IMG/VR virus record: IMGVR_UViG_3300040801_004532
Span: 184,137-248,136 of that record
Reading direction: 5' to 3' (one strand)
Length of the DNA stretch: 64,000 bases
Part shown: positions 1,001 to 16,031 of the stretch, piece by piece
How the letters are laid out: every line of letters begins with the position of its first letter
How positions within the stretch are numbered: the stretch's first letter is position 1
The notes under the pieces: generated by a model
Seen by the model: the letters and a program-made list of their open reading frames with translations, nothing else
The model's database searches: none
Told to the model about the DNA's origin: nothing
Program-made: the position numbers and the translations under genes

Positions 1001-2061
1001 AATCATTAAATACAGCAAAGAGTCCGATAGCAATTGTAAATTGGTTGCTTACAAGAAAATGTAATCTTGAGTGCGACTATTGTGCAATTGTAAAAAATTA
1101 TCCAGACATGCCAAAAAGCTATCCGTTTGTGGGGCATTATTATCAAAATGAAATGTCAACTGAGGTTGTTCTTAAAGCCCTAGAAAAATTTCATAAATAT
1201 AATCCAAATACTTTTCATATCTTTTATGGAGGGGAACCCTTATTAAGAAAAGATTTAGCAACAATAATAAGTTTCTGTAATAACTTGGAGATTCCATATA
1301 CAATAATTAGTAATAACAGCGAAGCTGTGCAGCCTCTAATAGAAAAGCTTTTTGAAGAAGTTGGATTTGTTGAGGGGTTTACAAGCTCTGTTGATCCTAT
1401 TGTCTATACTCAAGAGGATTATGTTGATCCCTCAAGATTACACAAAAGCACTGAAGGATTATCTCGTTTAAAGCATATGAAGAAATGGGCAAATGTTAGG
1501 GACGTGGTTGCTGAAATAACAATTTCACAAGGCATGGAAAATTATTTAATTCCTTTAATTAAAGATTTGAGCGAAAACCAAATTTATAGCGATATTACTT
1601 TCGTTGATATTGCTAAAAATGACTTTTACGATTTTTCAAATGTTAGAGACGAGGAGTTTTTAGTTAAACCAACATTGAAATTAGCAAAGATTTTTCTGGA
1701 GTTACTTGAAAGCGATTATCTAATTCATATGAAAGATCTTCTTCTCCCAGAAATGTTTGATACACTCCCATCAAATTTTGATTGTGATCTTGAAAATCGA
1801 GTCCATAATGTTACAGTTGATGCAGATGGTAGTATGCGCTTATGTCTTAGAATAAAAGGTGAGGTAACTCCAACAATCCATGTTTCAAATTTGTTTGACT
1901 CATCAGGAGCCGTATCAAAAGATTTTTACGATTTAATGTGTGTTGATAAGAGAAGACATTGTGAATTATGCAATCACTCGTGTTTAATGATGAGCAAACA
2001 TATATCCAAAAGACCATCAAAGAAAGATATAATAGATAGTTTATTCCATAGGGAGGACTAA
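997..2061 (+). CDS. Radical SAM protein with C-terminal Cys-containing (SPASM/twitch-like) region
   Basis: CNLECDYC (CxxxCxxC), GGEPLLR motif, C-terminal C261..C and CxxCxxxC. Confidence 0.9.
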   Translation: MKSLNTAKSPIAIVNWLLTRKCNLECDYCAIVKNYPDMPKSYPFVGHYYQNEMSTEVVLKALEKFHKYNPNTFHIFYGGEPLLRKDLATIISFCNNLEIPYTIISNNSEAVQPLIEKLFEEVGFVEGFTSSVDPIVYTQEDYVDPSRLHKSTEGLSRLKHMKKWANVRDVVAEITISQGMENYLIPLIKDLSENQIYSDITFVDIAKNDFYDFSNVRDEEFLVKPTLKLAKIFLELLESDYLIHMKDLLLPEMFDTLPSNFDCDLENRVHNVTVDADGSMRLCLRIKGEVTPTIHVSNLFDSSGAVSKDFYDLMCVDKRRHCELCNHSCLMMSKHISKRPSKKDIIDSLFHRED

Positions 2062-2064
2062 AAG

Positions 2065-2400
2065 ATGCCACAAGCTGACCAAGATGTTATTCGTAGCGCC
2101 ATTGAGTTTTGGGAAAAGGTATATCAGGCGGGAGAAGCAAAGGTAAAATTTACTAAGAAAACAGATGGAACAATCAGAATCATGCGGTTCACTCTTGATT
2201 TTAGCAGGATCCCAAAAAAGCAACATCCAAAAAGTGTAAATATGGCACAGATCCTAAGGTTAATTCAAAAGAGTGGAATTATCCATGTTTATGATTTGGA
2301 CAAAAAAGAGTGGAGATCGGTTCCTTTTAGAAGCGTTGATTGGCTTGAGATCGGAGATGAACGATACAAGATAAGACCATTTAAAAGGGGTGAGAAATGA
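2065..2400 (+). CDS. DUF2693/WYL_2-like SH3-barrel phage protein
   Basis: FTKKTDGTIRIMRFTL and VYDLDKKEWRSV resemble this phage family. Confidence 0.6.
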   Translation: MPQADQDVIRSAIEFWEKVYQAGEAKVKFTKKTDGTIRIMRFTLDFSRIPKKQHPKSVNMAQILRLIQKSGIIHVYDLDKKEWRSVPFRSVDWLEIGDERYKIRPFKRGEK

Positions 2401-2777
2401 CAGTTATAAATGATATTTTGAAAGAAATGAAAACAACAGATCTGACCCAACAGGTCAGACAATTTTGTGATATAATAACAAAAGAAGAAAGAGAAAAATT
2501 TAAAAATCCGGAACTATTACCGAGAGGTGCCAATGTTTTCCTTTCAATTGAAGTACCAGGGAGAAGCGATAAGGAAATCGGTTTTTTAACATTAGAACGT
2601 GAAGGAGAAGAAGACTATTTAATTGTCTATCATACCCTGGAAAAATATAGAGTTTCATCTGATCCAGAGAATATGATACCACCAAGACGAAGAAAAGTAT
2701 GGGCAGTTAATGAAAACAAGGCTGAAAAAATTTTAACCCAGTTTGCTAAAACCGTGAAACTTTTAAGAGGTGAATAA
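2397..2777 (+). CDS. Hypothetical protein
   Basis: ATGA overlap with upstream gene, SD-like GGGTGAG, abuts next gene. Confidence 0.6.
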   Translation: MTVINDILKEMKTTDLTQQVRQFCDIITKEEREKFKNPELLPRGANVFLSIEVPGRSDKEIGFLTLEREGEEDYLIVYHTLEKYRVSSDPENMIPPRRRKVWAVNENKAEKILTQFAKTVKLLRGE

Positions 2778-5351
2778 ATGAAAGATGTTCTGTTAGGTAC
2801 TTCGAATCTAGGAGAAAATCGAGCAGTTGAAGAGATAAGGATTAGCCCAAATTATGCAAATCTGATAATATCAACATTCGAAGGTACAAAGGAGGATGAT
2901 TCTACCCCAGCTATTAAACGAAAAACTATATTCACTAAAGATTATATTTCCAAATTAAATGAGTCAAATAAATTATTTACTGGAAATGTTATGCCTCCGA
3001 ATTGCAGATATATAGAACCAATCAACAGAGGGGTCATTGCAGTTATTGAAGAACCCCCTTCATTTAGGACAATTTTTGTTGATAGAGACCTCCGGGAGGA
3101 ATTTAATGTATTATCAAAACAAGGACGCTTGGATGAATATGAAATACCAAAGAATTTCTTAGAGAAAAACAGACAACCATACTACCTTAATTTAGCAATA
3201 CCTTATACCATCTTTCTTATGTGGATAACGGAATATTTCAGCGTTGGAATAACTGAAGTATATTTTCGTACAAATCAATTGATGGGTCTTTCAGACAACC
3301 TTCTTTTAGCTCCATTTTTAAATATACCAACTGAGCAACGAATTTGCTATCAATCTGGAAATAAATGTATATCCCTAACTGCAGCTATACAACAAGGGAT
3401 TAAGGCCTTTTGGGAATCAACATTTAACTCAGATTATACACACAATTATGAAAGTTATAAAGAAACCCCAGTCGTTGGAAATTATCTTGAATGGCAAGCT
3501 ATGTCTAAAATAAATCCATTGTTTATCTATAACGCAGACTGGCAAGTTAGGCCTTATAATTTAGGTCAAAGAATTAACAATTTAATTGAGCAGGCAGGAG
3601 GAAGGTCAAAAAATAAATTCGGTTATGCAGAACTTGCTGACTTATTTTATTCAAGACTAGATTCAGGCGTTGATATAAAACCTTCTCCAAGATCTAAAAA
3701 TAAATATAGATTGTTTTTTGATATAGCAAATAGTCTATATTTAGATGATATACTTCATATTGAAGTTGGCGATACATTTAAAACACATGATGGAAAGATA
3801 GCATATATTGACTCTCTTGCTGGATTTTCAGATGGGAGCGAAATTAAATATATCCAAATAGATATTAATGGAAAAAAACATCTGATGAAATATACAAAGG
3901 AATGTAAAAAATTCCTTTTTGATAAAGTAAAAGAAGACCGATTTGCCAAAGAATATACGTTATCAAATGGCCAGGTGATTAAGGAAGGTGATATACTTAT
4001 TATAAAACCAACTAAATCTATGGAAATTTTCAGACGAGTTGAATATATAAGAAAAAGCCGTGGCCTTGAAGAAGATGCAGAAATAAGAGTTGGTCGAAAT
4101 TATTACCTTGCATCAAGATTAAAAGCTGAAAAGTTAGATGCTGATGAACCCATATATAAAGGTGTAAAACTAATAAAAGATAAAGAGTATATTATCTCTA
4201 CTGGTGGAGGTGGTATATTTTCTGAGGGTTATAGATGTAAATTTGAAAAACTTGATGCTCACAGAGATTCGTTAGTAGCATCATTTATTCAAAGTGGGGG
4301 ACGAAGACGAACTCTAAACCTGTCGGTTCCAAGACAAACCCAACTAGCTTATCCACTTGATCAAACTAAGCCACTTAAGACAGGAATCTCAAAAATAGGG
4401 AGAAAAGTCTTCACAGTAACTAAAAATGGATCTCATCCAAGCAAAGAAGGAATGTGGCAAGTGGGTCCATCTCTAATATTTGACGGCAGTTATGCAGTAA
4501 ATGCTTTAACTGTTGGGGATTTTATTAAAGAACTATATGATGACGATAAATTTCATATATCCGGGGTAGATTTTGATATTGATTTTGCAATTGGTGAAAA
4601 GGTTGTCGTAGCCAATTGGGAAGACCCCCTTTCTGTTCTATCTGTAAAAACTATTCAGGGGTTTAAGGAAACAGATAATCATTTCGATTTTGTCCTTTCA
4701 GATAAAGCAGGCAATTTAACAACAGAGCAATTTATTGATCCCCAATCAAATATCTATTCTGGCAAAATTAGAAAGGTTACAAATAAATGGGGACGATTAT
4801 CAGTTGGTACAAAAATTATTGCTGATGTACCAGGAATCCCCAACTTTCCGAAGAAGGACGTAAATATTATTGTTGCTTTCATTATTGATATACCAGACGA
4901 ACCGTTAGTATTGTGTTCAAATGGTTGTACGTTATGGTATAACGATGTCGTAGAAAAATTTAAGAAGATAAAGATGGGATCAAAACAATGGGAAAAGCTA
5001 CAACATGTTCCCCTAGATTTATCAAAGATTAAATTTCAGGCAGGGGATGTGGTTAACGGATTCTCTGACTTTAGAGAGTCTGGTGGATACCTTTTATATG
5101 ACCCATCACCAACCAGATCACTGAAAGCAATGCCAATGAATGTTATGCATATTGGAGACGAAGGATATCATTATGTTGCTGATAAATATTTTATGAATGA
5201 TATGATTTTCGATTGTATTCCAGCTCCAAGAGTCGCAACAACTAAAGTTGCCGATTCTGATATAGTTAAGGGATATTTAAATATTAATAGTTACCAGATT
5301 GAAGAAGATGATAGTTCAATATTTTCATTTCTGAAACCAAAGGAGAATTAA
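2778..5351 (+). CDS. Prokaryotic E2 family D (PRTRC protein B-like) domain fused to about 600 aa of beta-rich, possibly SH3/KOW-like, repeats
   Basis: IEEPPSFRTIFV, LAIPYTIF, LLLAPFLNI..ICY and FWESTFNSD resemble Prok-E2_D. Lies directly upstream of JAB and ThiF genes. Confidence 0.65.
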   Translation: MKDVLLGTSNLGENRAVEEIRISPNYANLIISTFEGTKEDDSTPAIKRKTIFTKDYISKLNESNKLFTGNVMPPNCRYIEPINRGVIAVIEEPPSFRTIFVDRDLREEFNVLSKQGRLDEYEIPKNFLEKNRQPYYLNLAIPYTIFLMWITEYFSVGITEVYFRTNQLMGLSDNLLLAPFLNIPTEQRICYQSGNKCISLTAAIQQGIKAFWESTFNSDYTHNYESYKETPVVGNYLEWQAMSKINPLFIYNADWQVRPYNLGQRINNLIEQAGGRSKNKFGYAELADLFYSRLDSGVDIKPSPRSKNKYRLFFDIANSLYLDDILHIEVGDTFKTHDGKIAYIDSLAGFSDGSEIKYIQIDINGKKHLMKYTKECKKFLFDKVKEDRFAKEYTLSNGQVIKEGDILIIKPTKSMEIFRRVEYIRKSRGLEEDAEIRVGRNYYLASRLKAEKLDADEPIYKGVKLIKDKEYIISTGGGGIFSEGYRCKFEKLDAHRDSLVASFIQSGGRRRTLNLSVPRQTQLAYPLDQTKPLKTGISKIGRKVFTVTKNGSHPSKEGMWQVGPSLIFDGSYAVNALTVGDFIKELYDDDKFHISGVDFDIDFAIGEKVVVANWEDPLSVLSVKTIQGFKETDNHFDFVLSDKAGNLTTEQFIDPQSNIYSGKIRKVTNKWGRLSVGTKIIADVPGIPNFPKKDVNIIVAFIIDIPDEPLVLCSNGCTLWYNDVVEKFKKIKMGSKQWEKLQHVPLDLSKIKFQAGDVVNGFSDFRESGGYLLYDPSPTRSLKAMPMNVMHIGDEGYHYVADKYFMNDMIFDCIPAPRVATTKVADSDIVKGYLNINSYQIEEDDSSIFSFLKPKEN

Positions 5352-7057
5352 TGTTTACAGTATTCGTGAATGATGGCACACAGGAAATGCCAGACGATGA
5401 TATTATGTATATTGTTGGGAAAGAGGGTATATTCCTAAAGAAAAAAATGGGAATTATGGAAAGCATTGCTCCCGTTAAAAACATTTCTATTCTAGAGAGT
5501 GTCGGTTCAATGGCGAAAATGCATATTCCGCCCATTCCTGGTCCAACATTTGCAAAGGCGGTTTCCTTTTTCAGAGAAGTTTATAAAGAACATTTTGGAG
5601 AGTCGATTGTTCTTATATTCTTCAATGAAAAAAGTGGAAGATATAAATTATTTCCGCCACATCAAAAGGTTACATCTGCATCATTAGATTACAATAGAGG
5701 CATTACCATCGAAGGATGGACTATGGTTGGAACAATTCATAGTCATGGAGGTATGTCAGCATTCCATTCGGGTGTTGATGATGATGATGAAAAAACATTC
5801 GATGGATTGCATATTACAGTTGGAAATGTAAAAGATGAGGATGTAAGCATCTCTGCATCTATTGTATCCAACGGCTATCGCTTTATGATTGAACCAGAAG
5901 AATATATAAAGCAAGTCAAAAAGACAAAAGAAATTGATGAAGAAAGAACAAGCTATTCAACCAAAGTTTATAAATATGATCCAGTTCAAAAGAAAACTGT
6001 GCTTGATGTAGAGGCAAGCAAAAAAAGAGCCTATAGCTGGAGAAAATATGATAAACGATATAGAGTTATGGTTCCCGAAAGCAAAAGCAAACATCCAGAA
6101 ACATGGATGAACAATGTTGAAAAGGGGACTTATGCCTACAGACGTGGTGGATATTACGGCGGTTATTACGGCAATTATGGGGGATGGGGACATCATTACG
6201 ATAGAAGTGCATGGGGTCAAAGATTCCTGCCTGCCAAAACCCCTACCCAGACAACAAAACCAGGATCACCTCCGTTAAATGTTGGTCCATCGGCCAATGT
6301 AAAACCCGTTGAATTTCCAACTCATGATATACCAGTAGACCCAGATATGCCTTGCCTTACATGCAAGCATAGAGAGTGTAAAATTCTGGGTGAAGCAGAA
6401 GACGAATTTGATGAAGATTTTTATAAATGCGAGAACTGTGGTACCATATACCATGGTGAAATTGATATTTGCGATAAGTGCAATACAGATGATCATTTAA
6501 TTCTTATTGAGGCCAAAGATATGAAAGACCTATATGAGCCTCTTGTTCTTGATGAAATTGACAGAGATGCAGCTATAGCAGCACAACCAGATCAGCTTGG
6601 CTTTACATCATGCCCAGTTTGCAAAAGCGTATTTATGCGATTGGAAACTGATGACGAATGCCCATTTTGTAGTGCAGCGCTTGAAGGAGACAATGAATTA
6701 TTAACAAAACAAGTCGAATGCCCGTGGTGCTATCAAGGGGTATATGAAACAAAATTAGATCATCAACGACGGTGCCCATATTGCCGAAATGAAATCCCTT
6801 TGGATGCCAAACTTTTGACCATAGGATTTGATCCAGATGATGAAATTGAAAATCATATGAGATCTGATTCCGGGCCAGAAGATGAACAATCTGAAGATTT
6901 TCATGAAGAGGTCTTGCGTCAAGCTAAGCAAGCCGACGAATCAATCGAACGAATCCCCGATCCCAGTAAATCTGAAATTCCTATTTCATCCAGATTTACA
7001 GCTAAAAGGATCAAAGATATGATGCGTAAAGCATTTAGGGGGAAAGGTCATGCCTGA
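5351..7057 (+). CDS. JAB/MPN+ metalloprotease (Prok-JAB, PRTRC protein A-like) with Gly/Tyr-rich linker and multiple CxxC zinc ribbons
   Basis: JAMM motif GTIHSHGGMSAFHSGVD (HxH-x7-S-x2-D), DGLHITVG. C-terminal half has CENC/CDKC, CPVC/CPFC and CPWC/CPYC pairs. Confidence 0.85.
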   Translation: MFTVFVNDGTQEMPDDDIMYIVGKEGIFLKKKMGIMESIAPVKNISILESVGSMAKMHIPPIPGPTFAKAVSFFREVYKEHFGESIVLIFFNEKSGRYKLFPPHQKVTSASLDYNRGITIEGWTMVGTIHSHGGMSAFHSGVDDDDEKTFDGLHITVGNVKDEDVSISASIVSNGYRFMIEPEEYIKQVKKTKEIDEERTSYSTKVYKYDPVQKKTVLDVEASKKRAYSWRKYDKRYRVMVPESKSKHPETWMNNVEKGTYAYRRGGYYGGYYGNYGGWGHHYDRSAWGQRFLPAKTPTQTTKPGSPPLNVGPSANVKPVEFPTHDIPVDPDMPCLTCKHRECKILGEAEDEFDEDFYKCENCGTIYHGEIDICDKCNTDDHLILIEAKDMKDLYEPLVLDEIDRDAAIAAQPDQLGFTSCPVCKSVFMRLETDDECPFCSAALEGDNELLTKQVECPWCYQGVYETKLDHQRRCPYCRNEIPLDAKLLTIGFDPDDEIENHMRSDSGPEDEQSEDFHEEVLRQAKQADESIERIPDPSKSEIPISSRFTAKRIKDMMRKAFRGKGHA

Positions 7058-7736
7058 AAACCTAAATATTGTTATAATAGGGCTGGGAGGTATTGGTTCT
7101 GTTTTATCAGAAAGATTAAGTCGATTTCTAAATTATAATAGAGAATTGAAAACAAATATACTATTAGTTGATGGTGATTCATACGAGCCAAAAAATCAAG
7201 ATAGACAAGATTTCCTACAATTCGGAAACAAAGCCGAAATTAAGGCTGATGAATTAGCGATGAAATTTGGCGAGATTGAATTTGATGCCGTTGGTGAATA
7301 TATAAACGACGGCAATATTTCAGAAACAATACGGGATGGAGACATTATCTTCATTTGTGTTGACAATCACAAATCCAGAATGATAATTAACAATTACTGT
7401 AAAACTTTAACCAATGTTATTTTAATTTCTGGTGGGAATGAGCTTACAGATGGAAATGCACAACTTTATGTCAGAGAAGGAGGTGTGGATAAAACTCCCG
7501 ACTTGTGTACATACCATCCAGAGATAGCAAATCCCGACGATAAATTACCCGAAGAAATGTCTTGTGAAGAATTATCCCAGTCAGAGCCACAGTTGTATTT
7601 TACAAATCTAGGAGTGGCTACTCTTATGTGTTGGATGTTTTATAATGCGTTTGTCAATAAAGTATATGATAGATCCGAAGCTTATTTCGATATTCTTACA
7701 ATGTCTGCAGACTCCAAAATCCGAGTTACAAAGTGA
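7050..7736 (+). CDS. ThiF/E1-like adenylating enzyme (PRTRC ThiF-like)
   Basis: IIGLGGIG Rossmann loop, VDGDSYEPKNQDRQ, CVDNHKSR, SGGNE, candidate catalytic Cys in MSCEE, QLYFTN. Confidence 0.9.
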   Translation: MPENLNIVIIGLGGIGSVLSERLSRFLNYNRELKTNILLVDGDSYEPKNQDRQDFLQFGNKAEIKADELAMKFGEIEFDAVGEYINDGNISETIRDGDIIFICVDNHKSRMIINNYCKTLTNVILISGGNELTDGNAQLYVREGGVDKTPDLCTYHPEIANPDDKLPEEMSCEELSQSEPQLYFTNLGVATLMCWMFYNAFVNKVYDRSEAYFDILTMSADSKIRVTK

Positions 7737-7788: not shown

Positions 7789-8262
7789 ATGGGTGCAACT
7801 TTTACTCGTGATCAACTGGAAGTCAAGACCGCAGTCGAACTGAAACGTATGTGCGTGGACGAGCTGGGAATCCCCGGGATGACCAAAAAGCCGAAGGCCG
7901 TGGTCATCAACGCAATCATGGAAAAATTCGGGACCAGAACCGTGGCCTCCGGCGGCACCATCTCCAAAGATGGTGGCAAAATGACCGGAATGGAATGGCA
8001 GGCCCGAAGTGTCATGACCAAACCGGGTGCTCCTACCGGTGCCAAAACAACCACAACCATCCATGTTTCCTGCGGTGCCTCCGCCGGGAATTTCCCCGTA
8101 GCGGGCCGCAAGGTTTCCGAAGTCGGGGAATTCCTCCGGGAAGTTCTGAACGTGGATCGCCTATCGACCGGCCTGGTCAACGGCCATGAAGTCGACGCCG
8201 GCTATGTCCTGAAACCCGGCGACAATCTCGAGTTCCTCAAACCGGCAGGTAAAAAGGGATAA
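7789..8262 (+). CDS. Ubiquitin-like (beta-grasp) modifier with N-terminal Rho-N/HEH-like helical domain
   Basis: N-terminal LEVKTAVELKRMCVDELGIPGMTKKPKAVVINAI is Rho_N-like. C-terminal IHVSCG..VAGRKVSEV..LNV..LVNG..VLKPGDNLEFLKPAGKKG is beta-grasp-like with a terminal Gly. Confidence 0.8.
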   Translation: MGATFTRDQLEVKTAVELKRMCVDELGIPGMTKKPKAVVINAIMEKFGTRTVASGGTISKDGGKMTGMEWQARSVMTKPGAPTGAKTTTTIHVSCGASAGNFPVAGRKVSEVGEFLREVLNVDRLSTGLVNGHEVDAGYVLKPGDNLEFLKPAGKKG

Positions 8263-8289
8263 ACTGCCATATTAAGCAGTATGTTAGAA

Positions 8290-8309
8290 GGGGGGCCTCC
8301 GGGCCCCCC
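8290..8309 (+). terminator. GC-rich hairpin with UNCG tetraloop after the Ubl gene (attenuator or mRNA stabiliser)
   Basis: GGGGGGCC-TCCG-GGCCCCCC 8-bp stem with only a weak U tract. A second small stem ACTGC..GCAGT lies at 8263-8280. Confidence 0.55.
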
Positions 8310-8337
8310 AATCTTAAAAAAGAGAGGAAATGTATTA

Positions 8338-9234
8338 GTGCTTCGTAAAGTGACAGTAATTGGACTTGGAACTCTTGGTGGGTTCCTTTGCAAGCACATA
8401 TCAGAACTAGAGAATATAAAAGAAATGGTTATCGTTGATAATGATATTGTGGAAAGCAAAAATGTTTTCTCATCTATTTACAAATATTCTCACATTGGCG
8501 AATATAAGGTCGACGCTCTAAAGGAAATAATTGAGGACGATGTTGCTGTCACAATCAGGAAACAAGATTATAGAGAAGGAAGTACAATTTTACCACTCAG
8601 CGATCTAGTAATTGATTGTCGTGATGTGGTTTGTGATAGAAAAGGCGAAATTGATGTAAGATTATTTATATCAGAAAGAATTCTTATTTTCGATTGTAGA
8701 AAATTTGTCAGAAATACTTGTAGTTATGATGGTAGTTATTCTTTAAAATTGAACAAAAGCGAAATAAACAAAGCAGCCTTTTTCGCTGCTCAAATAATAA
8801 ATAGCGAAGAACTCCCCGATATGATAAAAAATAATATGGTTCAAAGAATTGATTTAAATCTATTGCCATCTGTAATGAGCAGAGCAATAAGAAGAACCCT
8901 TGAAAATAAGATAGATATAATTTATGATCTAACAGAGAATGCAAGAAGGTTACATTGCATTGATGAAAATATCCGACCAATCTTAACATTAAATAAACAA
9001 AAAGATACAAAAGTTTTTGTTGGTACAAGGGATGATACCAGAAAATTTCCAGAGGTAATAACGAGCAAGTATCAAATAATACCACAAAATTCATTAAAAG
9101 ATTCTTTCGATGTAATTCAAAAGTTAACTGAAGTTGTTCAAAGACAACCAGGCGTAAGAAATTTCATAGTTACAGTAAGGAGCGAAAATGGGGAAGATTT
9201 TGTCGAGTTACTGGAAGAAACAGGAGCCGCGTGA
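8338..9234 (+). CDS. Second ThiF/E1-like Rossmann protein, truncated fold plus unknown C-terminal domain
   Basis: VIGLGTLGG, VDNDIVESKN, YKVDAL, DLVIDCRD. Likely start is GTG 8338 after SD GAGAGG, because the track start at 8281 runs through the hairpin. Confidence 0.7.
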   Translation: MLRKVTVIGLGTLGGFLCKHISELENIKEMVIVDNDIVESKNVFSSIYKYSHIGEYKVDALKEIIEDDVAVTIRKQDYREGSTILPLSDLVIDCRDVVCDRKGEIDVRLFISERILIFDCRKFVRNTCSYDGSYSLKLNKSEINKAAFFAAQIINSEELPDMIKNNMVQRIDLNLLPSVMSRAIRRTLENKIDIIYDLTENARRLHCIDENIRPILTLNKQKDTKVFVGTRDDTRKFPEVITSKYQIIPQNSLKDSFDVIQKLTEVVQRQPGVRNFIVTVRSENGEDFVELLEETGAA

Positions 9235-9661
9235 ATTTATCGAAGATCGAATAACAATATGGGGGTATAACCCACACCTACCAGTAGTTGAAGAAGCCCA
9301 TGTATACGAAGGCATAATTGTTCCTGATAGGATGATAAAAGACAAAAATGTTTATCAGATTGTACAATTAGACGAGCTTTATTATATAAACGGTTTCGTA
9401 GTAATAACAGAAAATGAGTTAGTTAAAAATGTAATTTTATTTGGTTATCATCCAAATCGAGATCCAGAAACACATCTATATTGTTTACCCGACAGAAAAA
9501 AGAATATTAAATTTACACAAGAATATTTTAGTTTGTTGATGACTAACATCAAGACATATTATCTTGATGATTGCTTTTATATGCCCGGCAAACATCAGGT
9601 CAAATATAAAAAATTAAAGTCGTTGTATGTTCAAATGAACGAAGGAGAAAAACATGGATGA
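9188..9661 (+). CDS. Putative E2/UBC-like conjugating protein
   Basis: FGYHPNRDPETHLYCLP matches the E2 active-site pattern HPN-x(7-8)-hydrophobic-C-L. Lies at the end of the E1/JAB/Ubl operon. Start uncertain. Confidence 0.55.
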   Translation: MGKILSSYWKKQEPREFIEDRITIWGYNPHLPVVEEAHVYEGIIVPDRMIKDKNVYQIVQLDELYYINGFVVITENELVKNVILFGYHPNRDPETHLYCLPDRKKNIKFTQEYFSLLMTNIKTYYLDDCFYMPGKHQVKYKKLKSLYVQMNEGEKHG

Positions 9662-9878
9662 AGAAAAGAATAATATAATGGAAGACTATATAAGGTCCTT
9701 GATTAAAGATGAGTTAAAAAACATAGATGTAATATTAAAAAAGGAAGAAGCCAATGAAATAGTAAAGGCAATTATGCCACAATTAGATAGCTTAATAGCA
9801 GATCGTATAAAGCTGCATTTTTCAGAGCTGGCGAAAATGGTCCAGCAAAAATTTGGTGGAAGTGACAAAGGAGAGTAG
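9654..9878 (+). CDS. Small helical hypothetical protein immediately upstream of beta'
   Basis: SD GAAGGAG, overlaps upstream stop, ends 3 nt before rpoC. Confidence 0.6.
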   Translation: MDEEKNNIMEDYIRSLIKDELKNIDVILKKEEANEIVKAIMPQLDSLIADRIKLHFSELAKMVQQKFGGSDKGE

Positions 9879-9881
9879 ATA

Positions 9882-12548
9882 ATGCCAAAGTTATTGGATT
9901 ATTCTGCATTTTGTGAAAACCTAGAGGAAGTTTCCTCTCTAAAAGTGTTTGGAAAGAAAAAGTTTCATCCACATGGTCTGTTCTCCGAGCAAATTTTCGG
10001 CCCGATAAAAAATTATACTTGCCAATGTGGCATCTATTATGGAATTTCTAAATCGGGCGGTAAATGCGACCTTTGTGGGGTCGATATTGTTAATAGTGAT
10101 GAACGAAGAAAAAGATTTGCAAAAATCAAAATACCAATACCAGTTGTCAATCCAATCTTTTATGATTTGCTTGCAGAGATTGGAGGAAAAACATTAAAGC
10201 ATGCAATTGATGAATTGATGCGTAATGACAAAAGCTTCCTTTATATGGATGGCGGTGAGCATATTATCAGCACAGATGAACCCCCAGATGGAGTACGAAT
10301 ATACGAAAGAACAGATGCAATAATGAAGCTAGTGAGTGATCTAGCAAATCTGTTTGCAAACGATGGGGTAGAAGAATGGAAATTAATTACAAACAATATA
10401 GATAGCCTTTTGATAAACCAAATAATCGTTTTACCTCCGGATCTCAGACCAACATCTGCTTCTGGTGGCGGTAAACATTTGATGGATAAAATCAATAGGT
10501 ATTATGTTCAGATATTAACAAAGAAAGAAATTATGAAAGATACAATGCTTGATATTATACGAGACAAGAAATTATATTATACCTACTTCAAGCAATTGCA
10601 GAAAGATGTAAATGAATTATACCATCGTATATTAGAAAAGATGGCTAAAAAAGAAGGGTTGATCAGAGGAAACATTTTGGGGAAACGAATTGATTTCTCC
10701 GGTAGAGCAGTCATTACTCCTGATCCAACCCTCAACCTTGATGAGTGTGTTTTACCATATACAATGGTTCTGGAGATATTTAAACTTCCGATTGCAAAAC
10801 GAATCATTCAGCTTGGTAAATTTAAACTATTGAATAAAGCTATTGATTTTGTTGATAGATGTATTGAAACAAATTCTCCAGTATTATGCAAAATCTGTGA
10901 AGAGATAACCAAAGATGAGGTATGTATTCTAAACCGTCAACCATCTCTTCATAAACTTGGAATGCTTGGATTTAATATTAAACTAACATTGGATAAGGTT
11001 ATAAAAATACATCCGCTTGTTTGTCCTCCATTCAATGCAGATTTCGATGGAGATCAAATGGCAGTTTATATCCCAATTACAGAAGAAGCAAAACAAGAAG
11101 TTCGTGAAAAAATGTTTGTTACAAAAAATCTAAGTAGTCCGGCAAATGAGGGGTTGACAACAACACCGAGTCAAGATGTAATCCTTGGTATTTATTTTAT
11201 CACATCAGAAGATTATCCAGATCGAGAAGAAGGTTTTAAAATTTTCAATGACTGTCTGCCTTCTGATTATCCAGAAATAAAAGAAATCATAAATAAAAAT
11301 AAATTGATGGTTATTTTAAATGATATTAAAGATAGATATCCAGAAAACACAACAATGAAAGTACTAGATTCAATTAAAAGAGTTGGTTTCAAATATGCAA
11401 CTCTTTTAGGTTCAACAATGTCACTTGATGATTTTGATATTGCTGGCGTCGAAAAAGTGAAGAGTGATATATTTGGAAAAGATGATGTAAGAGAGCAATT
11501 AACCGCTTTTTCTAATCCAGAAGTAACCAGTTTTCTAAAAGATAATTTTCCATATGCTTACATGATCGAATCTGGAGCAAGAGGAAGCTGGGATCAAGCC
11601 AAACAGCTAATATTGGCAAGAGGGTTCATCTCAAATTTTGAAGGCGAAATTCTTCCTGTACCGATTAAACATAGTTTGGTTGAAGGGTTAACTCAAGAGG
11701 AATTCTTTTATTCAACATATGGATGTAGAAAAGGTCTTCTTGATGTTGCGTTGAATACAGGTACAAGCGGATACTTATCTAGAAAATTAATTTTTACATG
11801 TGCGAACCTTCAACTAGATGAAGGACTTGATGATTGCGGAACAACTGACCTATTAGAAGTCGATGTTAAAAACGAAAGAAAAGCAAGAATGTTAGTTAAT
11901 CGCTATTATCTAAATGGCGGAAAACTAGTAAAAATTACACCAGATAACTATAAAGATATAGTTGGAAAAACAATTGAAATAAGAAGTCCGATTTTATGTA
12001 ACTCGCCAAAACTTTGCAAGATTTGTTACGGCGATCTTCATAAAAAATTAAACAGTAGGTTTGTTGGAATCATTGCAGCTCAAACATTGGGCGAGCGAGG
12101 AACTCAGCTTGTATTAAGAACCTTTCATACATCTGGTTCAGCGATTATCAAAGGGGTCGATGATTATAAAGATCAATCAATGAGACAAAGTGATATTATT
12201 GGAGATCTTGCATCGGTCGCAAGGATGCTACATAAATTTACAGGCAAGACATACGTTCAAATAGTAGACGAATTATTTGAGGTTTACAATAAAGATATTT
12301 ACCATGTCCATTTTGAATGTGTAGTTGCACAGCTAATGTGGCACAATAATAAAAAGTGGAGATTATTGAAAAATAGAGATACGGTAAAACCAACGTATTA
12401 TAGTATTCAATCAGTGCCAAATCAAGAGAGTTGGATATTGGCAATGGCATTTTCAAACCCCAAGCGTAGCATTTTACGGGGTATTGTATATGAAGGTAAA
12501 TATTCAGGGATAATGGACAAAATTCTCAAAGGAGAAAAAATTGAATGA
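9882..12548 (+). CDS. rpoC: DNA-directed RNA polymerase beta' subunit (phage-encoded, compact, unsplit)
   Basis: HGLFSEQIFGP, Zn site CQCG..CDLCG, LGKRIDFSGRAVI, LNRQPSLH, catalytic FNADFDGD, SGARG, SGYLSRKL, TQLVLRTFH. Confidence 0.97.
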   Translation: MPKLLDYSAFCENLEEVSSLKVFGKKKFHPHGLFSEQIFGPIKNYTCQCGIYYGISKSGGKCDLCGVDIVNSDERRKRFAKIKIPIPVVNPIFYDLLAEIGGKTLKHAIDELMRNDKSFLYMDGGEHIISTDEPPDGVRIYERTDAIMKLVSDLANLFANDGVEEWKLITNNIDSLLINQIIVLPPDLRPTSASGGGKHLMDKINRYYVQILTKKEIMKDTMLDIIRDKKLYYTYFKQLQKDVNELYHRILEKMAKKEGLIRGNILGKRIDFSGRAVITPDPTLNLDECVLPYTMVLEIFKLPIAKRIIQLGKFKLLNKAIDFVDRCIETNSPVLCKICEEITKDEVCILNRQPSLHKLGMLGFNIKLTLDKVIKIHPLVCPPFNADFDGDQMAVYIPITEEAKQEVREKMFVTKNLSSPANEGLTTTPSQDVILGIYFITSEDYPDREEGFKIFNDCLPSDYPEIKEIINKNKLMVILNDIKDRYPENTTMKVLDSIKRVGFKYATLLGSTMSLDDFDIAGVEKVKSDIFGKDDVREQLTAFSNPEVTSFLKDNFPYAYMIESGARGSWDQAKQLILARGFISNFEGEILPVPIKHSLVEGLTQEEFFYSTYGCRKGLLDVALNTGTSGYLSRKLIFTCANLQLDEGLDDCGTTDLLEVDVKNERKARMLVNRYYLNGGKLVKITPDNYKDIVGKTIEIRSPILCNSPKLCKICYGDLHKKLNSRFVGIIAAQTLGERGTQLVLRTFHTSGSAIIKGVDDYKDQSMRQSDIIGDLASVARMLHKFTGKTYVQIVDELFEVYNKDIYHVHFECVVAQLMWHNNKKWRLLKNRDTVKPTYYSIQSVPNQESWILAMAFSNPKRSILRGIVYEGKYSGIMDKILKGEKIE

Positions 12549-15544
12549 AAATAGTCAATCCTACCTACAAAATTCAGGATGAAGACAATAGCATCTTCAC
12601 TCTGAGAAAACGGGACTACGAAAATATTTTACCCTTAGCGAGACAAATTCTTGAACCAGTAAGAGAAATTGGTTTCGAAATTACAGAACTTGAACTAAGA
12701 GATTCAAGATTTTCTTCCGGTGAACTTTCAAGAACGATAAAGCAAACTCTTGTTATTCGCCTTCAAAAAGGAACCTCAAATATTGATCTTTCAATATTCG
12801 TTCCAAAATTAGTTGACGACAATTATATATTTATCAATGGAAGGAAAAAGATTCCGTTATTTCAATTATTTGATATTCCTGTTGTAACAAGGGGCGAGTC
12901 GATAAAATTAAGAACTAATGTAGCAACATTGATGGTGGTTGTAGAAAAAGAGGAACCAAAAATTAATATAAGTTTTCTCGGAAAGAAAGTGCCTCTATCA
13001 TTATTGATGTTAGCATATTATGGCCCAGAAGTACTAAACAAACGATTTAATTTATCACAGTTCAATATAAAAGATACAAGTAATTTAATGGAGTTGTTAA
13101 TCGAAGATATAAAACTATTTTGGATTGAGTCAAAGGGTTATACCCAAGATGATTTTATAGTTGAATTAGGACGCGATTATTCAAGATATAATGCAAAATC
13201 AAAGGGCGAAGATGTTGTATATGCCCTAGATTTGATTCCAAAAATTGATCCAATCACAGCTCAATTTTTACAAACCGGATCAATTATCGAAGAGTTATTA
13301 TTGGCATTACAAACAGGCGATATAGATGATACGTTATTTACAAATAAGAGAATTAGATGTTTTGAATATATGATCTTTTCTAAACTATCTAAAATTGTTT
13401 TCGATCTTTGTTTTTCAAACAGGACAAGCAGACAACCAAAATTCAACATTAACTCAAATCAAATTATTTCAGAATGTAATGTTTCAGATATTGTTCAGTT
13501 TGATTTTTCAATCAACCCAATTGAAGAATTAACTAAAATGTCAAGAGTTAGTCTTTTGGGTCCAGGCGGATTTAAAAGAGAAAACATTCCAAGGCATTTA
13601 CGAGATATTTGCCCGTCGATGTTTGGACGGATTTGTCCGGTTGATACACCAGATCGTGATAATTGTGGTGTATTGCAAAATTTTGTTTCAAATGTGAAAC
13701 TTGAGGAAAACATGAGGTTCTCAGAGGAAATCTCTGAACAACCAATATCAATTCCTGTTTCGATGGTTCCGTTCTTGAAGAATGATGATCCAACCAGATT
13801 ACAAATGGCATCATCACAAATGAGACAGGCGATTCTTTTAAAAGATTTTGATGAACCCATGATAAAATCTGGATGTGAGGGACTATATACAGACAAAACC
13901 CAATTTGTCAAAAAGGCGAAGAAAAATGGGGAAGTGATCCACGTTGACAACAAGTATTTAATTGTAATCTATGATGATGGTGAAGCAGAAATCTTTGACA
14001 TAATGTATCGAAAAATTTATGTTGAGCACATGGATTTTATGAATATCTATGTCAAAGCGGGTGACAAGTTCAAGGCTGGGGATATACTTGCTGAAAGTAA
14101 TTTTTGTAAAGATGGAAATATATGCTTTGGAAAAAATCTCTTGACAGGAGTTATGGTTTACTACGGTAATAATTATGAAGATGGAATTGTTGTTTCAGAT
14201 AGACTTGTTAATGAAGATGTTTTAACATCAGTACATTTTAAAGATCTATCATTTACACTACCACCAAATAAGGTCTTGTTATCATTACAAGAAGGAAGAT
14301 ACAAGCCGTTGCCGAAAGCTCTGGAACAATTAAGCGCAGGGTCTCCTTATGCAAAGATAAAAACTCTTTCTACCGATGATATGTATTCTGTATTTTCAGA
14401 AGAAATTTCATTGGAAGCTGAAAAATCATTTATTATTCCTGAGGTAAATATCTATGCAAATACATGGAATGATGAAATTCCTGAGTTCAATGACTGGATT
14501 GAAAAGACAGTCAGTGAACAACAAGAGCGAGATGCAGGATTAAGAAAAATTATAAAGGACAAACTTCCATCCGAAATATCTAAGAAATTCATTAAGGAAA
14601 GCGGATTGGAACTGTCTTCATTTGTTGGAAAGTATAAAATGAAGCGAGAAAAAATAAACGGCATCCATATTGAAATGTATGGTATTCACTTTAGAAAAAT
14701 AAAAGTGGGTGATAAAATAGCGAACAGGCATGGAAATAAAGGAGTTATTTCCAGAATTGTTCCTCATGAAAAGATGCCAAAATTAGAAGATGGAAGACAT
14801 CTTGATATCTGCATCAATCCATTGGGTATTATCTCAAGAATGAACATCGGACAGTTGTTCGAATTGCAATTATCAATGTCTTTATATGATTTACAACAGA
14901 CATTGCTAAAAATGATTAACGAAGAAAAACCCCAAGACGAGATTAAAAAATATCTTATGGGGTATATAAATACTGTGGATAAAACAAAAACCGGATGGTA
15001 TTCAGAGCAATTTGAGAATCAATTACCAAAAGAAATCACAAACGAATTTGTTGCAACCTTAGTTTTAATTCAACCACCTTTTGAGTCATGTAAATTAGAT
15101 GATATTAAAAAGGCTCTTGAATATACCGGTACCGAATTTAAACAAAAGGTTTATGATCCGTTATCAAAAACCTATTTTAAAAATCCCATTGCTGCAGGTT
15201 ACATTTATTTCCTAAGGATGGTTCATATTGCAGAAGAAAAATTAGCAGCGAGAGGCATTGGAGCATATGCAAAAAGAACCCTTCAACCATTAGGGGGAAG
15301 GAAAAATAAAGGTGGCCAAAGATGCGGCGAAATGGAAACAGCTTGTATTATTGGTCATGATGCACCAATAAATCTATTTGAATTTCTTACTACAAAATCT
15401 GACTGTATAGATTTGAAAAATTTGTACATCAGGAAGTTTATTGATCCAAATTTAGTTGACGAAAGTAAAGAGGTTGATTCCATTCCGGAATCTGTAAAAT
15501 TGTTAAATGCGTACTTAACAGTTATTGGAGTAAAACAAAAATGA
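12545..15544 (+). CDS. rpoB: DNA-directed RNA polymerase beta subunit (phage-encoded, unsplit)
   Basis: GRICPVDTPDRDNCG, MASSQMRQA, NYEDG, GDKIANRHGNKGVIS, INPLGIISRMNIGQ, GGQRCGEME. ATGA overlap with rpoC. Confidence 0.97.
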   Translation: MKIVNPTYKIQDEDNSIFTLRKRDYENILPLARQILEPVREIGFEITELELRDSRFSSGELSRTIKQTLVIRLQKGTSNIDLSIFVPKLVDDNYIFINGRKKIPLFQLFDIPVVTRGESIKLRTNVATLMVVVEKEEPKINISFLGKKVPLSLLMLAYYGPEVLNKRFNLSQFNIKDTSNLMELLIEDIKLFWIESKGYTQDDFIVELGRDYSRYNAKSKGEDVVYALDLIPKIDPITAQFLQTGSIIEELLLALQTGDIDDTLFTNKRIRCFEYMIFSKLSKIVFDLCFSNRTSRQPKFNINSNQIISECNVSDIVQFDFSINPIEELTKMSRVSLLGPGGFKRENIPRHLRDICPSMFGRICPVDTPDRDNCGVLQNFVSNVKLEENMRFSEEISEQPISIPVSMVPFLKNDDPTRLQMASSQMRQAILLKDFDEPMIKSGCEGLYTDKTQFVKKAKKNGEVIHVDNKYLIVIYDDGEAEIFDIMYRKIYVEHMDFMNIYVKAGDKFKAGDILAESNFCKDGNICFGKNLLTGVMVYYGNNYEDGIVVSDRLVNEDVLTSVHFKDLSFTLPPNKVLLSLQEGRYKPLPKALEQLSAGSPYAKIKTLSTDDMYSVFSEEISLEAEKSFIIPEVNIYANTWNDEIPEFNDWIEKTVSEQQERDAGLRKIIKDKLPSEISKKFIKESGLELSSFVGKYKMKREKINGIHIEMYGIHFRKIKVGDKIANRHGNKGVISRIVPHEKMPKLEDGRHLDICINPLGIISRMNIGQLFELQLSMSLYDLQQTLLKMINEEKPQDEIKKYLMGYINTVDKTKTGWYSEQFENQLPKEITNEFVATLVLIQPPFESCKLDDIKKALEYTGTEFKQKVYDPLSKTYFKNPIAAGYIYFLRMVHIAEEKLAARGIGAYAKRTLQPLGGRKNKGGQRCGEMETACIIGHDAPINLFEFLTTKSDCIDLKNLYIRKFIDPNLVDESKEVDSIPESVKLLNAYLTVIGVKQK

Positions 15545-15717: not shown

Positions 15718-16031
15718 AACCAACATGTCCGATTTGTGGTGGAGAAATTTTACTTGAACATATATTAAATTTATCTCATGTATATAAAATAGATAAAGAT
15801 AAATTTATAAGAGAGGACAACAATGATTTAATTAATAGTGGGGGATGGGTTCGTTTAATCTGCGAAAATGACAGAGAGCATCAATTAGAACCCACCCCCA
15901 CATCAGATATACCATATAATGATTTTATAGAATGGAAAGACGCTATCACTGATAAATTTTATGATTCTTGTGATAAAAAAAATATTGAAGGAGAACTAAT
16001 TCATGGAATGTTTGCCAGATATTCAGTGTGA
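15714..16031 (+). CDS. Zinc-ribbon protein
   Basis: Likely start ATG 15714 after GGAG. MKPTCPICG ... LICENDREH. Confidence 0.55.
   Translation: MKPTCPICGGEILLEHILNLSHVYKIDKDKFIREDNNDLINSGGWVRLICENDREHQLEPTPTSDIPYNDFIEWKDAITDKFYDSCDKKNIEGELIHGMFARYSV

What the first reader, a model, noticed from the sequence alone, without database searches (positions are those of the whole stretch)
9188..9661. Cryptic E2: HPN-x8-YCL active-site motif in a 157-aa orphan
Seen: FGYHPNRDPETHLYCLP preceded by beta strands and followed by a helix. Known: UBC enzymes have HPN about 8 residues before the catalytic Cys. Inference: this supplies the thioester-accepting E2, so the operon would hold two different E2-fold proteins.
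Basis: partly seen in the sequence, partly recalled or inferred. Interest (0 to 1): 0.68.

Follow-up and report, generated by a model that had tools for sequence, protein, structure and literature searches.

The report
Phage E2-like enzyme with HPN-Cys site
A small gene in an uncultured giant phage probably encodes a stripped-down ubiquitin-conjugating (E2-type) enzyme, sitting in a phage-borne ubiquitin-like tagging module that has two E1-like and two E2-like proteins; no Pfam, PHROG, NCBIfam or PADLOC model reaches threshold on it.

Summary
ORF 9188-9661 (+) encodes 157 aa with FGYHPNRDPETHLYCLP. It is the only HPN-x7/8-C match in the window's six frames.

It is not an orphan. A profile search found 181 protein clusters, most about 110 aa. 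H88 is kept in 100%, P89 in 97%, N90 in 99% and C99 in 99% of 151 aligned members.

The model has no helix alpha1 and no C-terminal helices. No curated family model reaches its threshold.

In 39 of the 40 non-chance family loci fetched and mapped here the gene follows directly after a second ThiF/E1-like gene. The conserved block is: E2_D-like giant protein, JAMM peptidase, ThiF, Gly-ended Ubl, ThiF2, this gene, RNA polymerase beta'.

My reading is a divergent minimal E2, confidence about 0.55. The thioester chemistry, the cognate E1 and Ubl, and the targets are inferred. I class it as a new variant of a known kind.

The parts
9188..9661 (+). HPN-Cys protein (P0001, 157 aa): candidate minimal UBC-fold E2. 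Residues about 1-35 are lineage-specific and low-confidence. The family core is about residues 38-142.
9449..9484 (+). Active-site signature H88-P89-N90-x8-C99 (HPNRDPETHLYC)
   Evidence: It aligns with HPNVNFKTGEIC of the E2 Pex4p and with UQ_con profile positions 70-129 in member P0087.
9177..9182 (+). AAGGAG ribosome-binding site, 5 nt before the ATG. It lies inside the 3' end of the ThiF2 gene, and the two ORFs overlap by 47 nt.
8281..9234 (+). ThiF2: second E1-like protein (317 aa). The N-terminal ~110 aa form an adenylation-type Rossmann domain with GxGxxGG, D53, D55, N61, K76 and D112, but S/N/K replaces the Arg of the NxxRQ motif. The C-terminal ~100 aa have an unknown fold and end in a near-invariant ETGAA.
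7789..8262 (+). Ubl (157 aa): Rho_N/SAP-like N-terminus plus a ThiS/MoaD-like C-terminus ending ...LEFLKPAG[KR]KG. Some lineages carry one extra Cys. The gene is anomalously GC-rich.
7050..7736 (+). ThiF1: E1-like adenylyltransferase (228 aa) with the full ATP-site motif set (GxGGxG, D41, D43, N49, R52, Q53, D105) and conserved C172 and C194
5351..7057 (+). JAMM/JAB peptidase (568 aa; H130-S-H132...S140..D143) with a Cys-rich C-terminal half holding seven CxxC pairs
2778..5351 (+). 857-aa protein with an N-terminal Prok-E2_D/PRTRC_B-like domain (aa 171-243, nt 3288-3506). N182-x7-C190 is invariant and there is no His ('FLN' in place of HPN).
9654..9878 (+). Conserved 74-aa protein between the HPN-Cys gene and RNAP beta'. 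It is present in most but not all lineages.
9882..15544 (+). Phage RNA polymerase beta' (9882-12548) and beta (12545-15544). They always lie immediately downstream of the module.

Best explanation
ORF 9188-9661 encodes a divergent, minimal member of the UBC (E2) structural superfamily. It keeps the classical E2 catalytic signature, an HPN loop followed by the nucleophilic Cys99. It belongs to a ubiquitin-like conjugation module that is a conserved core block of an uncultured jumbo-phage clade.

Proposed mechanism (inferred):
1. The JAMM peptidase trims the Ubl where needed. Some lineages end ...KG-C.
2. A ThiF-type E1 adenylates the Ubl C-terminal Gly. ThiF1 has the complete ATP site. ThiF2 is the translationally coupled neighbour of this gene and may act as partner subunit or as a second E1.
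3. The E1 passes the Ubl as a thioester to Cys99.
4. Asn90 of the HPN loop helps aminolysis onto a target lysine.

The module would then hold two E2-type acceptors, this protein and the E2_D-like domain of the 857-aa protein.

What is shown: the motif, its near-invariance, the predicted fold and its E2-dominated structural neighbours, and the invariant synteny. What is inferred: thioester formation, which E1 and which Ubl, and the targets.
For: (1) Motif. HPN-x8-C is present. H88, P89, N90 and C99 are kept in 97-100% of a family of 181 clusters that are otherwise only 20-30% identical.

(3) Calibration. The experimentally proven E2 BubB matches UBE2D2 at 3.8 A over 104 Calpha and also lacks the two C-terminal helices.

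(4) Sequence. The family profile aligns HPNcdpktnefClp with HPNVNFKTGEICLD of the E2 Pex4p at the same spacing. Member P0087 matches Pfam UQ_con positions 70-129 of 140, from HPN through helix alpha2, at E 0.0033. UQ_con is the only family hit by more than one member.

(5) Context. 40 non-chance family loci were fetched and mapped here: L001-L020, L022-L040 and L042 (IMG/VR and assembly loci). 39 of them show ThiF2 directly upstream of this gene, abutting or overlapping it, with no insert between. In the fortieth, L039, the locus starts inside the gene. Where the locus reaches far enough, the block is E2_D-like, JAB, ThiF1, Ubl, ThiF2, this gene. The later look-ups L044, L045, L047 and L057 show the same order; L046, L048 and L049 do not (see the Against line), and L051 ends inside the gene.

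(6) In the divergent lineage L049, a second domain of this family (E 3.4e-7) sits in a 416-aa protein next to ThiF plus a JAB-like protein. That is the slot the E2_D-like protein holds in the window.

(7) Tandem-duplicated members keep the Cys in one copy and lose it in the other. This is the enzyme/pseudoenzyme pattern seen with E2/UEV pairs.

Against: No curated model reaches its cut-off. UQ_con scores 17.5 bits against 27, and Prok-E2_A to E give no hit. The profile-profile comparison with the operon's own E2_D-like domain aligns the N/C motif but is not significant (E 0.32).

The model has no N-terminal helix alpha1, which is the usual E1/E3-binding surface. It has 5-6 strands instead of 4, and only one helix after the Cys.

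The operon already has a plausible E2, so this protein is not needed to complete a cascade.

All homologues come from one phage clade with the whole region syntenic, RNAP genes included. Adjacency to ThiF2 is therefore not independent evidence of a functional link. In L049 the gene abuts RNAP beta' but is separated from ThiF2 by three ORFs, and in L046 and L048 no ThiF2 is seen in the roughly 0.7-1.2 kb of contig upstream of the gene.

I could not inspect residue-level superposition of H88, N90 and C99 on an E2 active site, because no coordinates are available.
Confidence: 0.55

Rival explanations
1. The protein is a thiol enzyme or sulfur/acyl relay that works with ThiF2 but is not an E2 for protein tagging. 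For example, Cys99 could carry a persulfide or thioester in a ThiF/MoeB- or MccB/PaaA-style reaction on a C-terminal carboxylate. The substrate could be the Ubl, or ThiF2's own conserved ...ETGAA tail. The product would be a thiocarboxylate or a modified peptide or nucleotide rather than a protein conjugate.
For: ThiF2's best solved relatives include MoeB, ThiF and the peptide-modifying MccB and PaaA. ThiF2 has a near-invariant C-terminal ETGAA of unknown role. A radical SAM enzyme lies upstream, and GCHY-1/FolE2-like or QueC genes lie nearby in related loci. The HPN-Cys gene is tied to ThiF2 more tightly than to the Ubl. Variable inserts occur between the Ubl and ThiF2 but never between ThiF2 and this gene in the loci.
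Against: The fold neighbours are E2, UEV and RWD proteins. They are not rhodanese, IscS or other sulfur carriers. The HPN + Cys signature is specifically the E2 one. A JAMM peptidase, an E2_D-like domain and a Gly-ended Ubl in the same block are the hallmark of conjugation operons.
Confidence: 0.17
2. The protein has a UBC/RWD fold but is not catalytic. It would be a UEV- or RWD-like adaptor that binds the Ubl, the E1 pair or the phage RNA polymerase. The conserved His, Asn and Cys would then be structural, for example a partial metal site with C91 and C129.
For: RWD and UEV scaffolds are among the structural neighbours. The gene always lies just upstream of RNAP beta', and in L049, L011 and L035 it abuts that gene. 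C129 is present in 77% and C91 in 40% of members. Cys-less copies exist in the tandem proteins.
Against: C99 is kept in 99% of members at 20-30% overall identity, which is unusual for a purely structural Cys. C91 and C129 are each dispensable: the contingency table is 40 both, 75 C129 only, 19 C91 only, 17 neither. A four-ligand metal site is therefore not a family feature. Every tandem protein still keeps one Cys-bearing copy.
Confidence: 0.13
3. The fold is unrelated, the HPN...C motif is convergent, and the function has nothing to do with the Ubl genes. The gene would simply be a conserved neighbour in a rigidly syntenic phage core region.
For: All sequence and structure scores against E2s are individually below significance. 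Synteny in this clade extends over more than 15 kb whatever the function. The ESM Atlas and BFVD searches gave no E2.
Against: A geometry-only search and a sequence motif independently point to the same superfamily, and the motif sits at the topologically right place, after the last meander strand and before the crossover helix. A family domain also occurs beside ThiF+JAB in L049.
Confidence: 0.12

Closest known systems
Canonical eukaryotic E2 / UBC enzymes (Pfam UQ_con; e.g. UbcH7/UBE2L3, UBE2S, Pex4p)
   Same: The HPN tripeptide is followed by the Cys at E2-like spacing, identical to Pex4p's HPN-x8-C. The order is beta-meander, HPN loop, Cys, crossover helix. These are the best structural neighbours. 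From my own knowledge, the 'CLP' after the Cys also occurs in UbcH7.
   Different: It has no helix alpha1 and no alpha3/alpha4, and it has extra N-terminal strands. It scores 17.5 bits against the 27-bit UQ_con cut-off in the best member. It is encoded by a bacteriophage-like virus next to ThiF-type E1s rather than a multidomain E1.
Non-canonical bacterial E2s of defence operons: BilB (Bil), BubB (Bub/6E), Cap2 E2 domain (CBASS)
   Same: All have a minimal UBC core lacking the C-terminal helix pair. All sit in operons with a ThiF-family E1, a JAB/other peptidase and a Gly-ended Ubl. Structural similarity to human E2s is at the same level, about 3.8 A over about 104 residues. BubB and Cap2 appear among the model's neighbours.
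   Different: Those E2s lack the HPN motif: BilB has a CEHH motif and BubB uses Ser. There is no PADLOC hit to any of them. This system is virus-encoded and syntenic with RNA polymerase genes, not a host defence island. It has two separate E1-like genes rather than an IAD-AAD fusion or an E2-E1 fusion.
PRTRC / Iyer-Burroughs-Aravind type '6d' operon (Ubl + JAB + E1-like + E2-like lacking the His; Pfam Prok-E2_D, Prok-JAB)
   Same: The upstream half of the module gives weak hits to PRTRC_B/Prok-E2_D, PRTRC_A/Prok-JAB and PRTRC_ThiF. That half is the 857-aa E2_D-like protein, JAB, ThiF1 and the Ubl. Its E2-like domain lacks the His, as described for type 6d.
   Different: All scores are far below the NCBIfam cut-offs (14.7 vs 131, 39.7 vs 102, 41 vs 145). 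The E2-like domain is embedded in an 857-aa protein. The ThiF2 + HPN-Cys pair has no counterpart in the NCBIfam PRTRC models that matched (PRTRC_A, PRTRC_B, PRTRC_ThiF) or in the type 6d gene list.
Heterodimeric eukaryotic E1s (NAE1-UBA3, SAE1-UBA2) and E2/UEV pairs (Ubc13-Mms2)
   Same: One ThiF has a complete ATP site and the other lacks the Arg of NxxRQ, which resembles an active/inactive adenylation pair. Tandem HPN-Cys proteins with one Cys-less copy resemble E2/UEV pairs.
   Different: This is analogy only. No heterodimer or complex was shown, and the single complex prediction gave no verdict.

Membership tests
UBC/E2 structural superfamily | UBC-like alpha/beta core: antiparallel beta-meander, active-site loop, crossover helix | tested here: inconclusive
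UBC/E2 structural superfamily | HPN motif about 7-8 residues before a conserved catalytic Cys | tested here: met
   H88 is 100%, P89 97%, N90 99% and C99 99% in 151 sequences. The spacing is x8, as in Pex4p.
UBC/E2 structural superfamily | N-terminal helix alpha1 (E1/E3-binding surface) | tested here: not met
   The model has no helix before the sheet. Most family members (~110 aa) begin at the strand equivalent to residues 35-44.
UBC/E2 structural superfamily | C-terminal helices alpha3/alpha4 | tested here: not met
   Only one helix (111-121) follows the Cys. BilB, BubB and Cap2, which are functional E2s, also lack these helices.
UBC/E2 structural superfamily | Forms an E1-dependent Ubl~Cys thioester | not testable with these tools
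   This needs biochemistry. The one complex prediction (ThiF2 + this protein) returned no verdict.
Pfam UQ_con (PF00179) | Score at or above the gathering cut-off (27 bits) | tested here: not met
   The window protein has no hit. Two of 129 family members hit, the best at 17.5 bits and E 0.0033, covering profile positions 70-129.
Pfam Prok-E2_A to E / PADLOC E2 models (Cap2, BilB) | A match to any of these profiles | tested here: not met
   No hit for the window protein or for any of 129 members.
PRTRC system (NCBIfam TIGR03735-03738) | PRTRC_A, PRTRC_B and PRTRC_ThiF above their cut-offs in one cassette | tested here: not met
   Neighbours score 39.7 against 101.8 (A), 14.7 against 131.5 (B) and 41.1 against 144.8 (ThiF). 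This is resemblance, not membership.
Prokaryotic Ubl-conjugation operon (generic: E1 + E2 + JAB + Gly-ended Ubl) | Co-located ThiF-type E1, JAMM peptidase, an E2-like domain with a conserved Cys, and a beta-grasp-type protein ending in Gly | tested here: met
   ThiF1 has the full ATP motif set. JAB has HSH...S..D. The E2_D-like domain has N182-x7-C190. The Ubl ends ...AG[KR]KG in 23 lineages. The Ubl's beta-grasp fold itself was not modelled.

The most novel reading that the evidence does not exclude
A whole clade of ~250-300 kb uncultured phages carries, as a core block next to its RNA polymerase genes, a two-tier and unusually eukaryote-like ubiquitination machine. It would consist of a split E1 and two E2s. 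ThiF1 would be the active E1 subunit and ThiF2 the partner, with a C-terminal UFD- or Ubl-like domain ending in a processable ...ETG|AA. One E2 would be an HPN-type enzyme closer in motif to eukaryotic E2s than any bacterial defence E2. The other would be a giant E2_D-domain protein. The virus would use them to tag viral or host proteins, rather than the host using them for defence. In the stronger version, ThiF2's tail domain is itself a second modifier whose dedicated E2 is this protein.
Probability: 0.15. Interest if true: 0.85.

Novelty: new variant of a known kind. Interest (0 to 1): 0.62.

Why it matters
The prokaryotic E1/E2/Ubl systems characterised in the papers read here (CBASS Cap2, Bil, Bub) are host anti-phage defences, and their E2s have lost the classical HPN motif. 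Here the same chemistry appears to be encoded by the virus. It is conserved across a deep phage clade, has two E1-like and two E2-like components, and one E2 keeps the eukaryote-type HPN-Cys site in a roughly 110-residue minimal core.

If this is confirmed, it would give three things:
- a minimal E2 for mechanistic work;
- a case of phage-side ubiquitin-like tagging, which could serve counter-defence, virion or polymerase regulation;
- another data point on where the HPN-type E2 active site existed outside eukaryotes.

It would also define a new family, since no Pfam, PHROG, NCBIfam or PADLOC model covers it.

Tried and rejected
- **Complex prediction.** ThiF2 (alignment A4) with the HPN-Cys protein (A2) gave ipSAE 0.00, 'no answer'. 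This is not evidence either way.
- **Direct sequence searches of the single protein.** PDB gave only chance hits. Phage GenBank tblastn gave none. ESM Atlas features gave no usable hit.
- **Other structure libraries.** The Atlas shape search returned only a viral hypothetical cluster, probably the same family. BFVD returned nothing significant, with a giant-virus E2 at rank 3, E 0.49.
- **hhalign of the family against the operon's E2_D-like domain.** It aligned HPN/FLN and C99/C190, but at E 0.32.
- **ThiF2 C-terminal domain.** hhalign against the Ubl was not significant, and there was no Pfam or PDB sequence hit.
- **The search for related loci with the 129-sequence alignment.** I replaced it with a degenerate DNA pattern for the motif.
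- **The same pattern in 596 Gb of prokaryote genomes.** It gave 25 hits, about the number my own rough estimate gives for chance (not a tool result). Only two are real. Both are phage contigs binned into MAGs, one a Thermoplasmatales MAG and one an 'uncultured bacterium'. There is therefore no cellular homologue and no host assignment.
- **Zn-site idea (H88, C91, C99, C129).** Rejected as a family feature because C91 and C129 are each dispensable.
- **UBC profile for a proper profile-profile test.** I did not build one, because no tool gave me bona fide E2 sequences and I did not type any from memory.
- **Not used or not met.** Read laying was not used. No alternative genetic code was needed.

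Full report
**1. Observation**

The ORF list gives 9188..9661 (+) as a 157-aa ATG ORF. Its translation contains FGYHPNRDPETHLYCLP. His88-Pro89-Asn90 are nt 9449-9457 and Cys99 is nt 9482-9484. An AAGGAG site lies 5 nt before the ATG, and the ORF overlaps the 3' end of the upstream gene by 47 nt. HPN-x(7-8)-C occurs only once in the six-frame translation of the window. The opposite strand is full of stops.

**2. Not an orphan**

A word-based search found 21 close relatives (49-78% identity), all unnamed metagenomic proteins. H88, P89, N90, C99 and C129 are invariant in them. A profile search of 1.8 billion cluster representatives found 181 clusters at E<=1e-3. Most are about 110 aa and match residues about 40-140 of the query. 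In 151 aligned sequences only six positions are kept in more than 80% of members: P46 (100%), I58 (95%), H88 (100%), P89 (97%), N90 (99%), C99 (99%). C129 is kept in 77% and P133 in 83%. The family signature is HPN-[CA]-[DN]-P-x-T-x-x-[FY]-C-[LI]-P. No Pfam, PHROG, NCBIfam or PADLOC model reaches threshold on the window protein.

**3. Fold**

With 22 sequences AlphaFold2 gave pLDDT 76. With the 129-sequence alignment A2 it gave pLDDT 87.5, with blocks 40-140 at 91-98.

- Topology: strands 21-25, 35-44, 48-51, 54-61, 67-75 and 78-84, then the HPN loop, Cys99, helix 111-121, and short strands 123-125 and 138-142.
- By my own reading of the entry titles, these make up roughly two thirds of the top 50.
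Structure-based identities to UbcH7 and Ubc12 are 13-18%.

Caveats:

- The Bub paper reports that BubB, a biochemically proven E2, matches UBE2D2 at 3.8 A over 104 Calpha and lacks the two C-terminal helices. The Bil paper's figure legend likewise marks UBE2D2's C-terminal helices as not shared by BilB. The present match is therefore at the level seen between real but divergent E2s.
- There are real differences from canonical E2s. There is no helix alpha1, there are extra N-terminal strands, and there is only one helix after the Cys.

**4. Sequence-level links to E2s (weak but consistent)**

- The family profile aligns HPNcdpktnefClp to HPNVNFKTGEICLD of the peroxisomal E2 Pex4p at identical spacing (E 0.54).
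- Among 129 members scanned against Pfam, UQ_con is the only family hit more than once.
- In member P0087 the match covers UQ_con positions 70-129 of 140, from HPN through the crossover helix (E 0.0033, 17.5 bits against a 27-bit cut-off).
- hhalign against the operon's own E2_D-like domain puts HPN on 'FLN' and C99 on C190 but is not significant.

**5. Context**

The window is the last 64 kb of a 248,136-bp IMG/VR virus record, linear and 79% complete by CheckV. It is AT-rich and has bacterial-type RNAP beta' and beta genes about 29% identical to cellular rpoC. GenBank phages hold no close relative: the beta' protein matches phage and bacterial rpoC records only at under 35% identity, ThiF2 gives one weak partial hit, and the HPN-Cys protein gives none. 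The closest sequencing run is a freshwater sediment metagenome.

Gene order upstream of this gene:

| Coordinates | Product | Evidence |
|---|---|---|
| 2778-5351 | 857-aa protein; Prok-E2_D/PRTRC_B-like domain at aa 171-243; invariant N182-x7-C190, no His | |
| 5351-7057 | JAMM peptidase (Prok-JAB/PRTRC_A-like; HSH...S..D) | |
| 7050-7736 | ThiF1; complete ATP-site motifs; conserved C172 | |
| 7789-8262 | 157-aa protein; Rho_N-like N-terminus; ThiS/MoaD-like end ...LEFLKPAG[KR]KG, +/- one Cys | |
| 8281-9234 | ThiF2; N-terminal adenylation-type domain (E 8.5e-13 to MoeB); S/N/K in place of the Arg of NxxRQ; unknown C-terminal domain ending in a near-invariant ETGAA | |

**6. Synteny across relatives**

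A degenerate DNA pattern for the motif recovered 36 IMG/VR loci, of which 34 are real. With the six loci from four protein look-ups, that makes 40 family loci mapped with profile HMMs in one pass (L001-L020, L022-L040, L042). They cover 20-78% identity in this protein.

- In 39 of the 40, ThiF2 lies directly upstream, its stop abutting or overlapping this gene's start. In L039 the locus starts inside the gene.
- Where the locus reaches far enough, the order is ...E2_D-like, JAB, ThiF1, Ubl, (0-1 kb variable insert), ThiF2, HPN-Cys, (74-aa), RNAP beta', RNAP beta.
- No insert ever separates ThiF2 from this gene in those loci.
- The later look-ups L044, L045, L047 and L057 show the same order. 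L051 ends inside the gene.

Because the whole region is syntenic in one clade, this is suggestive coupling, not independent proof. Two kinds of locus depart from the pattern. In L046 and L048 no ThiF2 is seen in the roughly 0.7-1.2 kb of contig upstream of the gene. The most divergent lineage, L049 (an 87-kb contig), is informative in both directions. There the gene has an N-terminal extension, abuts RNAP beta', and is separated from a 195-aa ThiF by three small ORFs. However, a second domain of the same family (E 3.4e-7, HPN-x14-C) sits in a 416-aa protein directly upstream of another ThiF and a JAB-like protein. That is the slot held by the E2_D-like protein in the window.

Several members are tandem duplications in which one copy keeps the Cys and the other has lost it, often while keeping HPN. 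This is the pattern of an enzyme with a pseudoenzyme partner.

**7. Interpretation**

The most economical reading is a minimal UBC-fold E2 with a classical HPN/Cys site. It would be charged by a ThiF-type E1 of the same module.

- I put the UBC-like fold at about 0.8.
- I put the catalytic E2 role at about 0.55.
- Which E1 charges it (ThiF1, ThiF2 or a heterodimer), which modifier it carries (the Gly-ended Ubl, or conceivably ThiF2's own ETGAA-ended tail domain) and which targets it has are all open.

The rivals are listed with the results that would refute them:

- a ThiF2-linked sulfur or acyl relay;
- a non-catalytic UEV/RWD-like adaptor, possibly for the polymerase;
- an unrelated fold with a convergent motif.

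The single complex prediction gave no verdict.

**8. Comparison with known systems**

The upstream half of the module resembles the PRTRC / type '6d' operons of Iyer, Burroughs and Aravind, whose E2-like protein lacks the His. It is far below the NCBIfam cut-offs, so it is not a member. The ThiF2 + HPN-Cys pair has no counterpart in the Bil, Bub or CBASS systems as described in the papers read, nor in the PRTRC models that matched. The E2s of Bil and Bub lack HPN, and those systems are host defence systems. Literature searches found no description of this phage module. I class it as a new variant of a known kind: an unannotated, virus-encoded E2-like family in a dual-E1, dual-E2 Ubl module.

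**9. Limits**

- No coordinates were available for residue-level superposition.
- No bona fide E2 alignment was available for a proper profile-profile test.

Noticed in passing
window 7789-8262: The Ubl gene is a sharp compositional island. It has GC 56% and GC3 63%, against about 33% and 25% for every neighbouring gene. That is why several spurious ORFs overlap it on both strands. The excess GC is present in all 29 related loci examined, by +5 to +23 points over the locus average. It may reflect very high expression or some constraint on the RNA.
   Followed up: partly
window 8932-9234 (ThiF2 C-terminal ~100 aa); L049:8807-9151: ThiF2 ends in a near-invariant ...VELL[PE]ETGAA across 26 lineages. 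In the divergent locus L049 the ThiF is only 195 aa, and a separate 114-aa ORF ending ...NVIPESA follows it, so the tail is a separable domain. By eye it reads beta-beta-alpha-beta-beta with a Gly-Ala-Ala tail. BilA is processed at Gly|Ala, so it could be a UFD or a second Ubl. There was no Pfam, PDB or hhalign support, and it was not folded.
   Followed up: partly
proteins P0086, P0139, P0166, P0084, P0065, P0171 (loci L044, L047): Some lineages have tandem-duplicated HPN-Cys proteins in the same genomic slot. One copy keeps HPN...C. The other has lost the Cys, often while keeping HPN.
   Followed up: partly
L049:3277-4527 and neighbours: In a distant relative a 416-aa protein carries an HPN-Cys family domain (SHPN-x14-C, E 3.4e-7) directly upstream of ThiF (261 aa) and a JAB-like protein. 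QueC/GATase and dCMP-deaminase genes are inserted in the module. No homologue of the 157-aa Ubl was detected there.
   Followed up: partly
window 6350-6860 (JAB protein aa ~335-500): The C-terminal half of the JAMM peptidase has seven CxxC pairs: CLTC, CENC, CDKC, CPVC, CPFC, CPWC and CPYC. These look like zinc ribbons or a RING-like cross-brace and might be an E3-like or substrate-binding part. Only C335 and C338 are conserved across lineages, and the length of this half varies from about 290 to 627 aa.
   Followed up: no
window 997-2777 and 16003-17567: Conserved flanking genes. Upstream lie a radical SAM enzyme, a WYL_2 (Sm-like SH3) protein and a 126-aa protein. Downstream of the RNAP genes lie a GCHY-1/FolE2-like protein and an AP_endonuc_2-like protein. 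Relatives carry QueC or GTP cyclohydrolase I in the region, which hints at 7-deazaguanine-type nucleotide modification.
   Followed up: no
L051 (DAOVGR010000079.1) and L057 (CBDUWI010000019.1): Two contigs with the full phage synteny (RNAP beta/beta', 74-aa gene and HPN-Cys gene; L057 also ThiF2, Ubl, ThiF1, JAB and E2_D-like) are filed inside prokaryote MAGs. One is labelled Thermoplasmatales archaeon and the other uncultured bacterium. This is probably a binning artefact and gives no reliable host.
   Followed up: partly
L035:7194-7634: One related phage has an extra ORF with weak similarity to the Ubl (E 1e-4), between the 126-aa gene and the E2_D-like gene.
   Followed up: no
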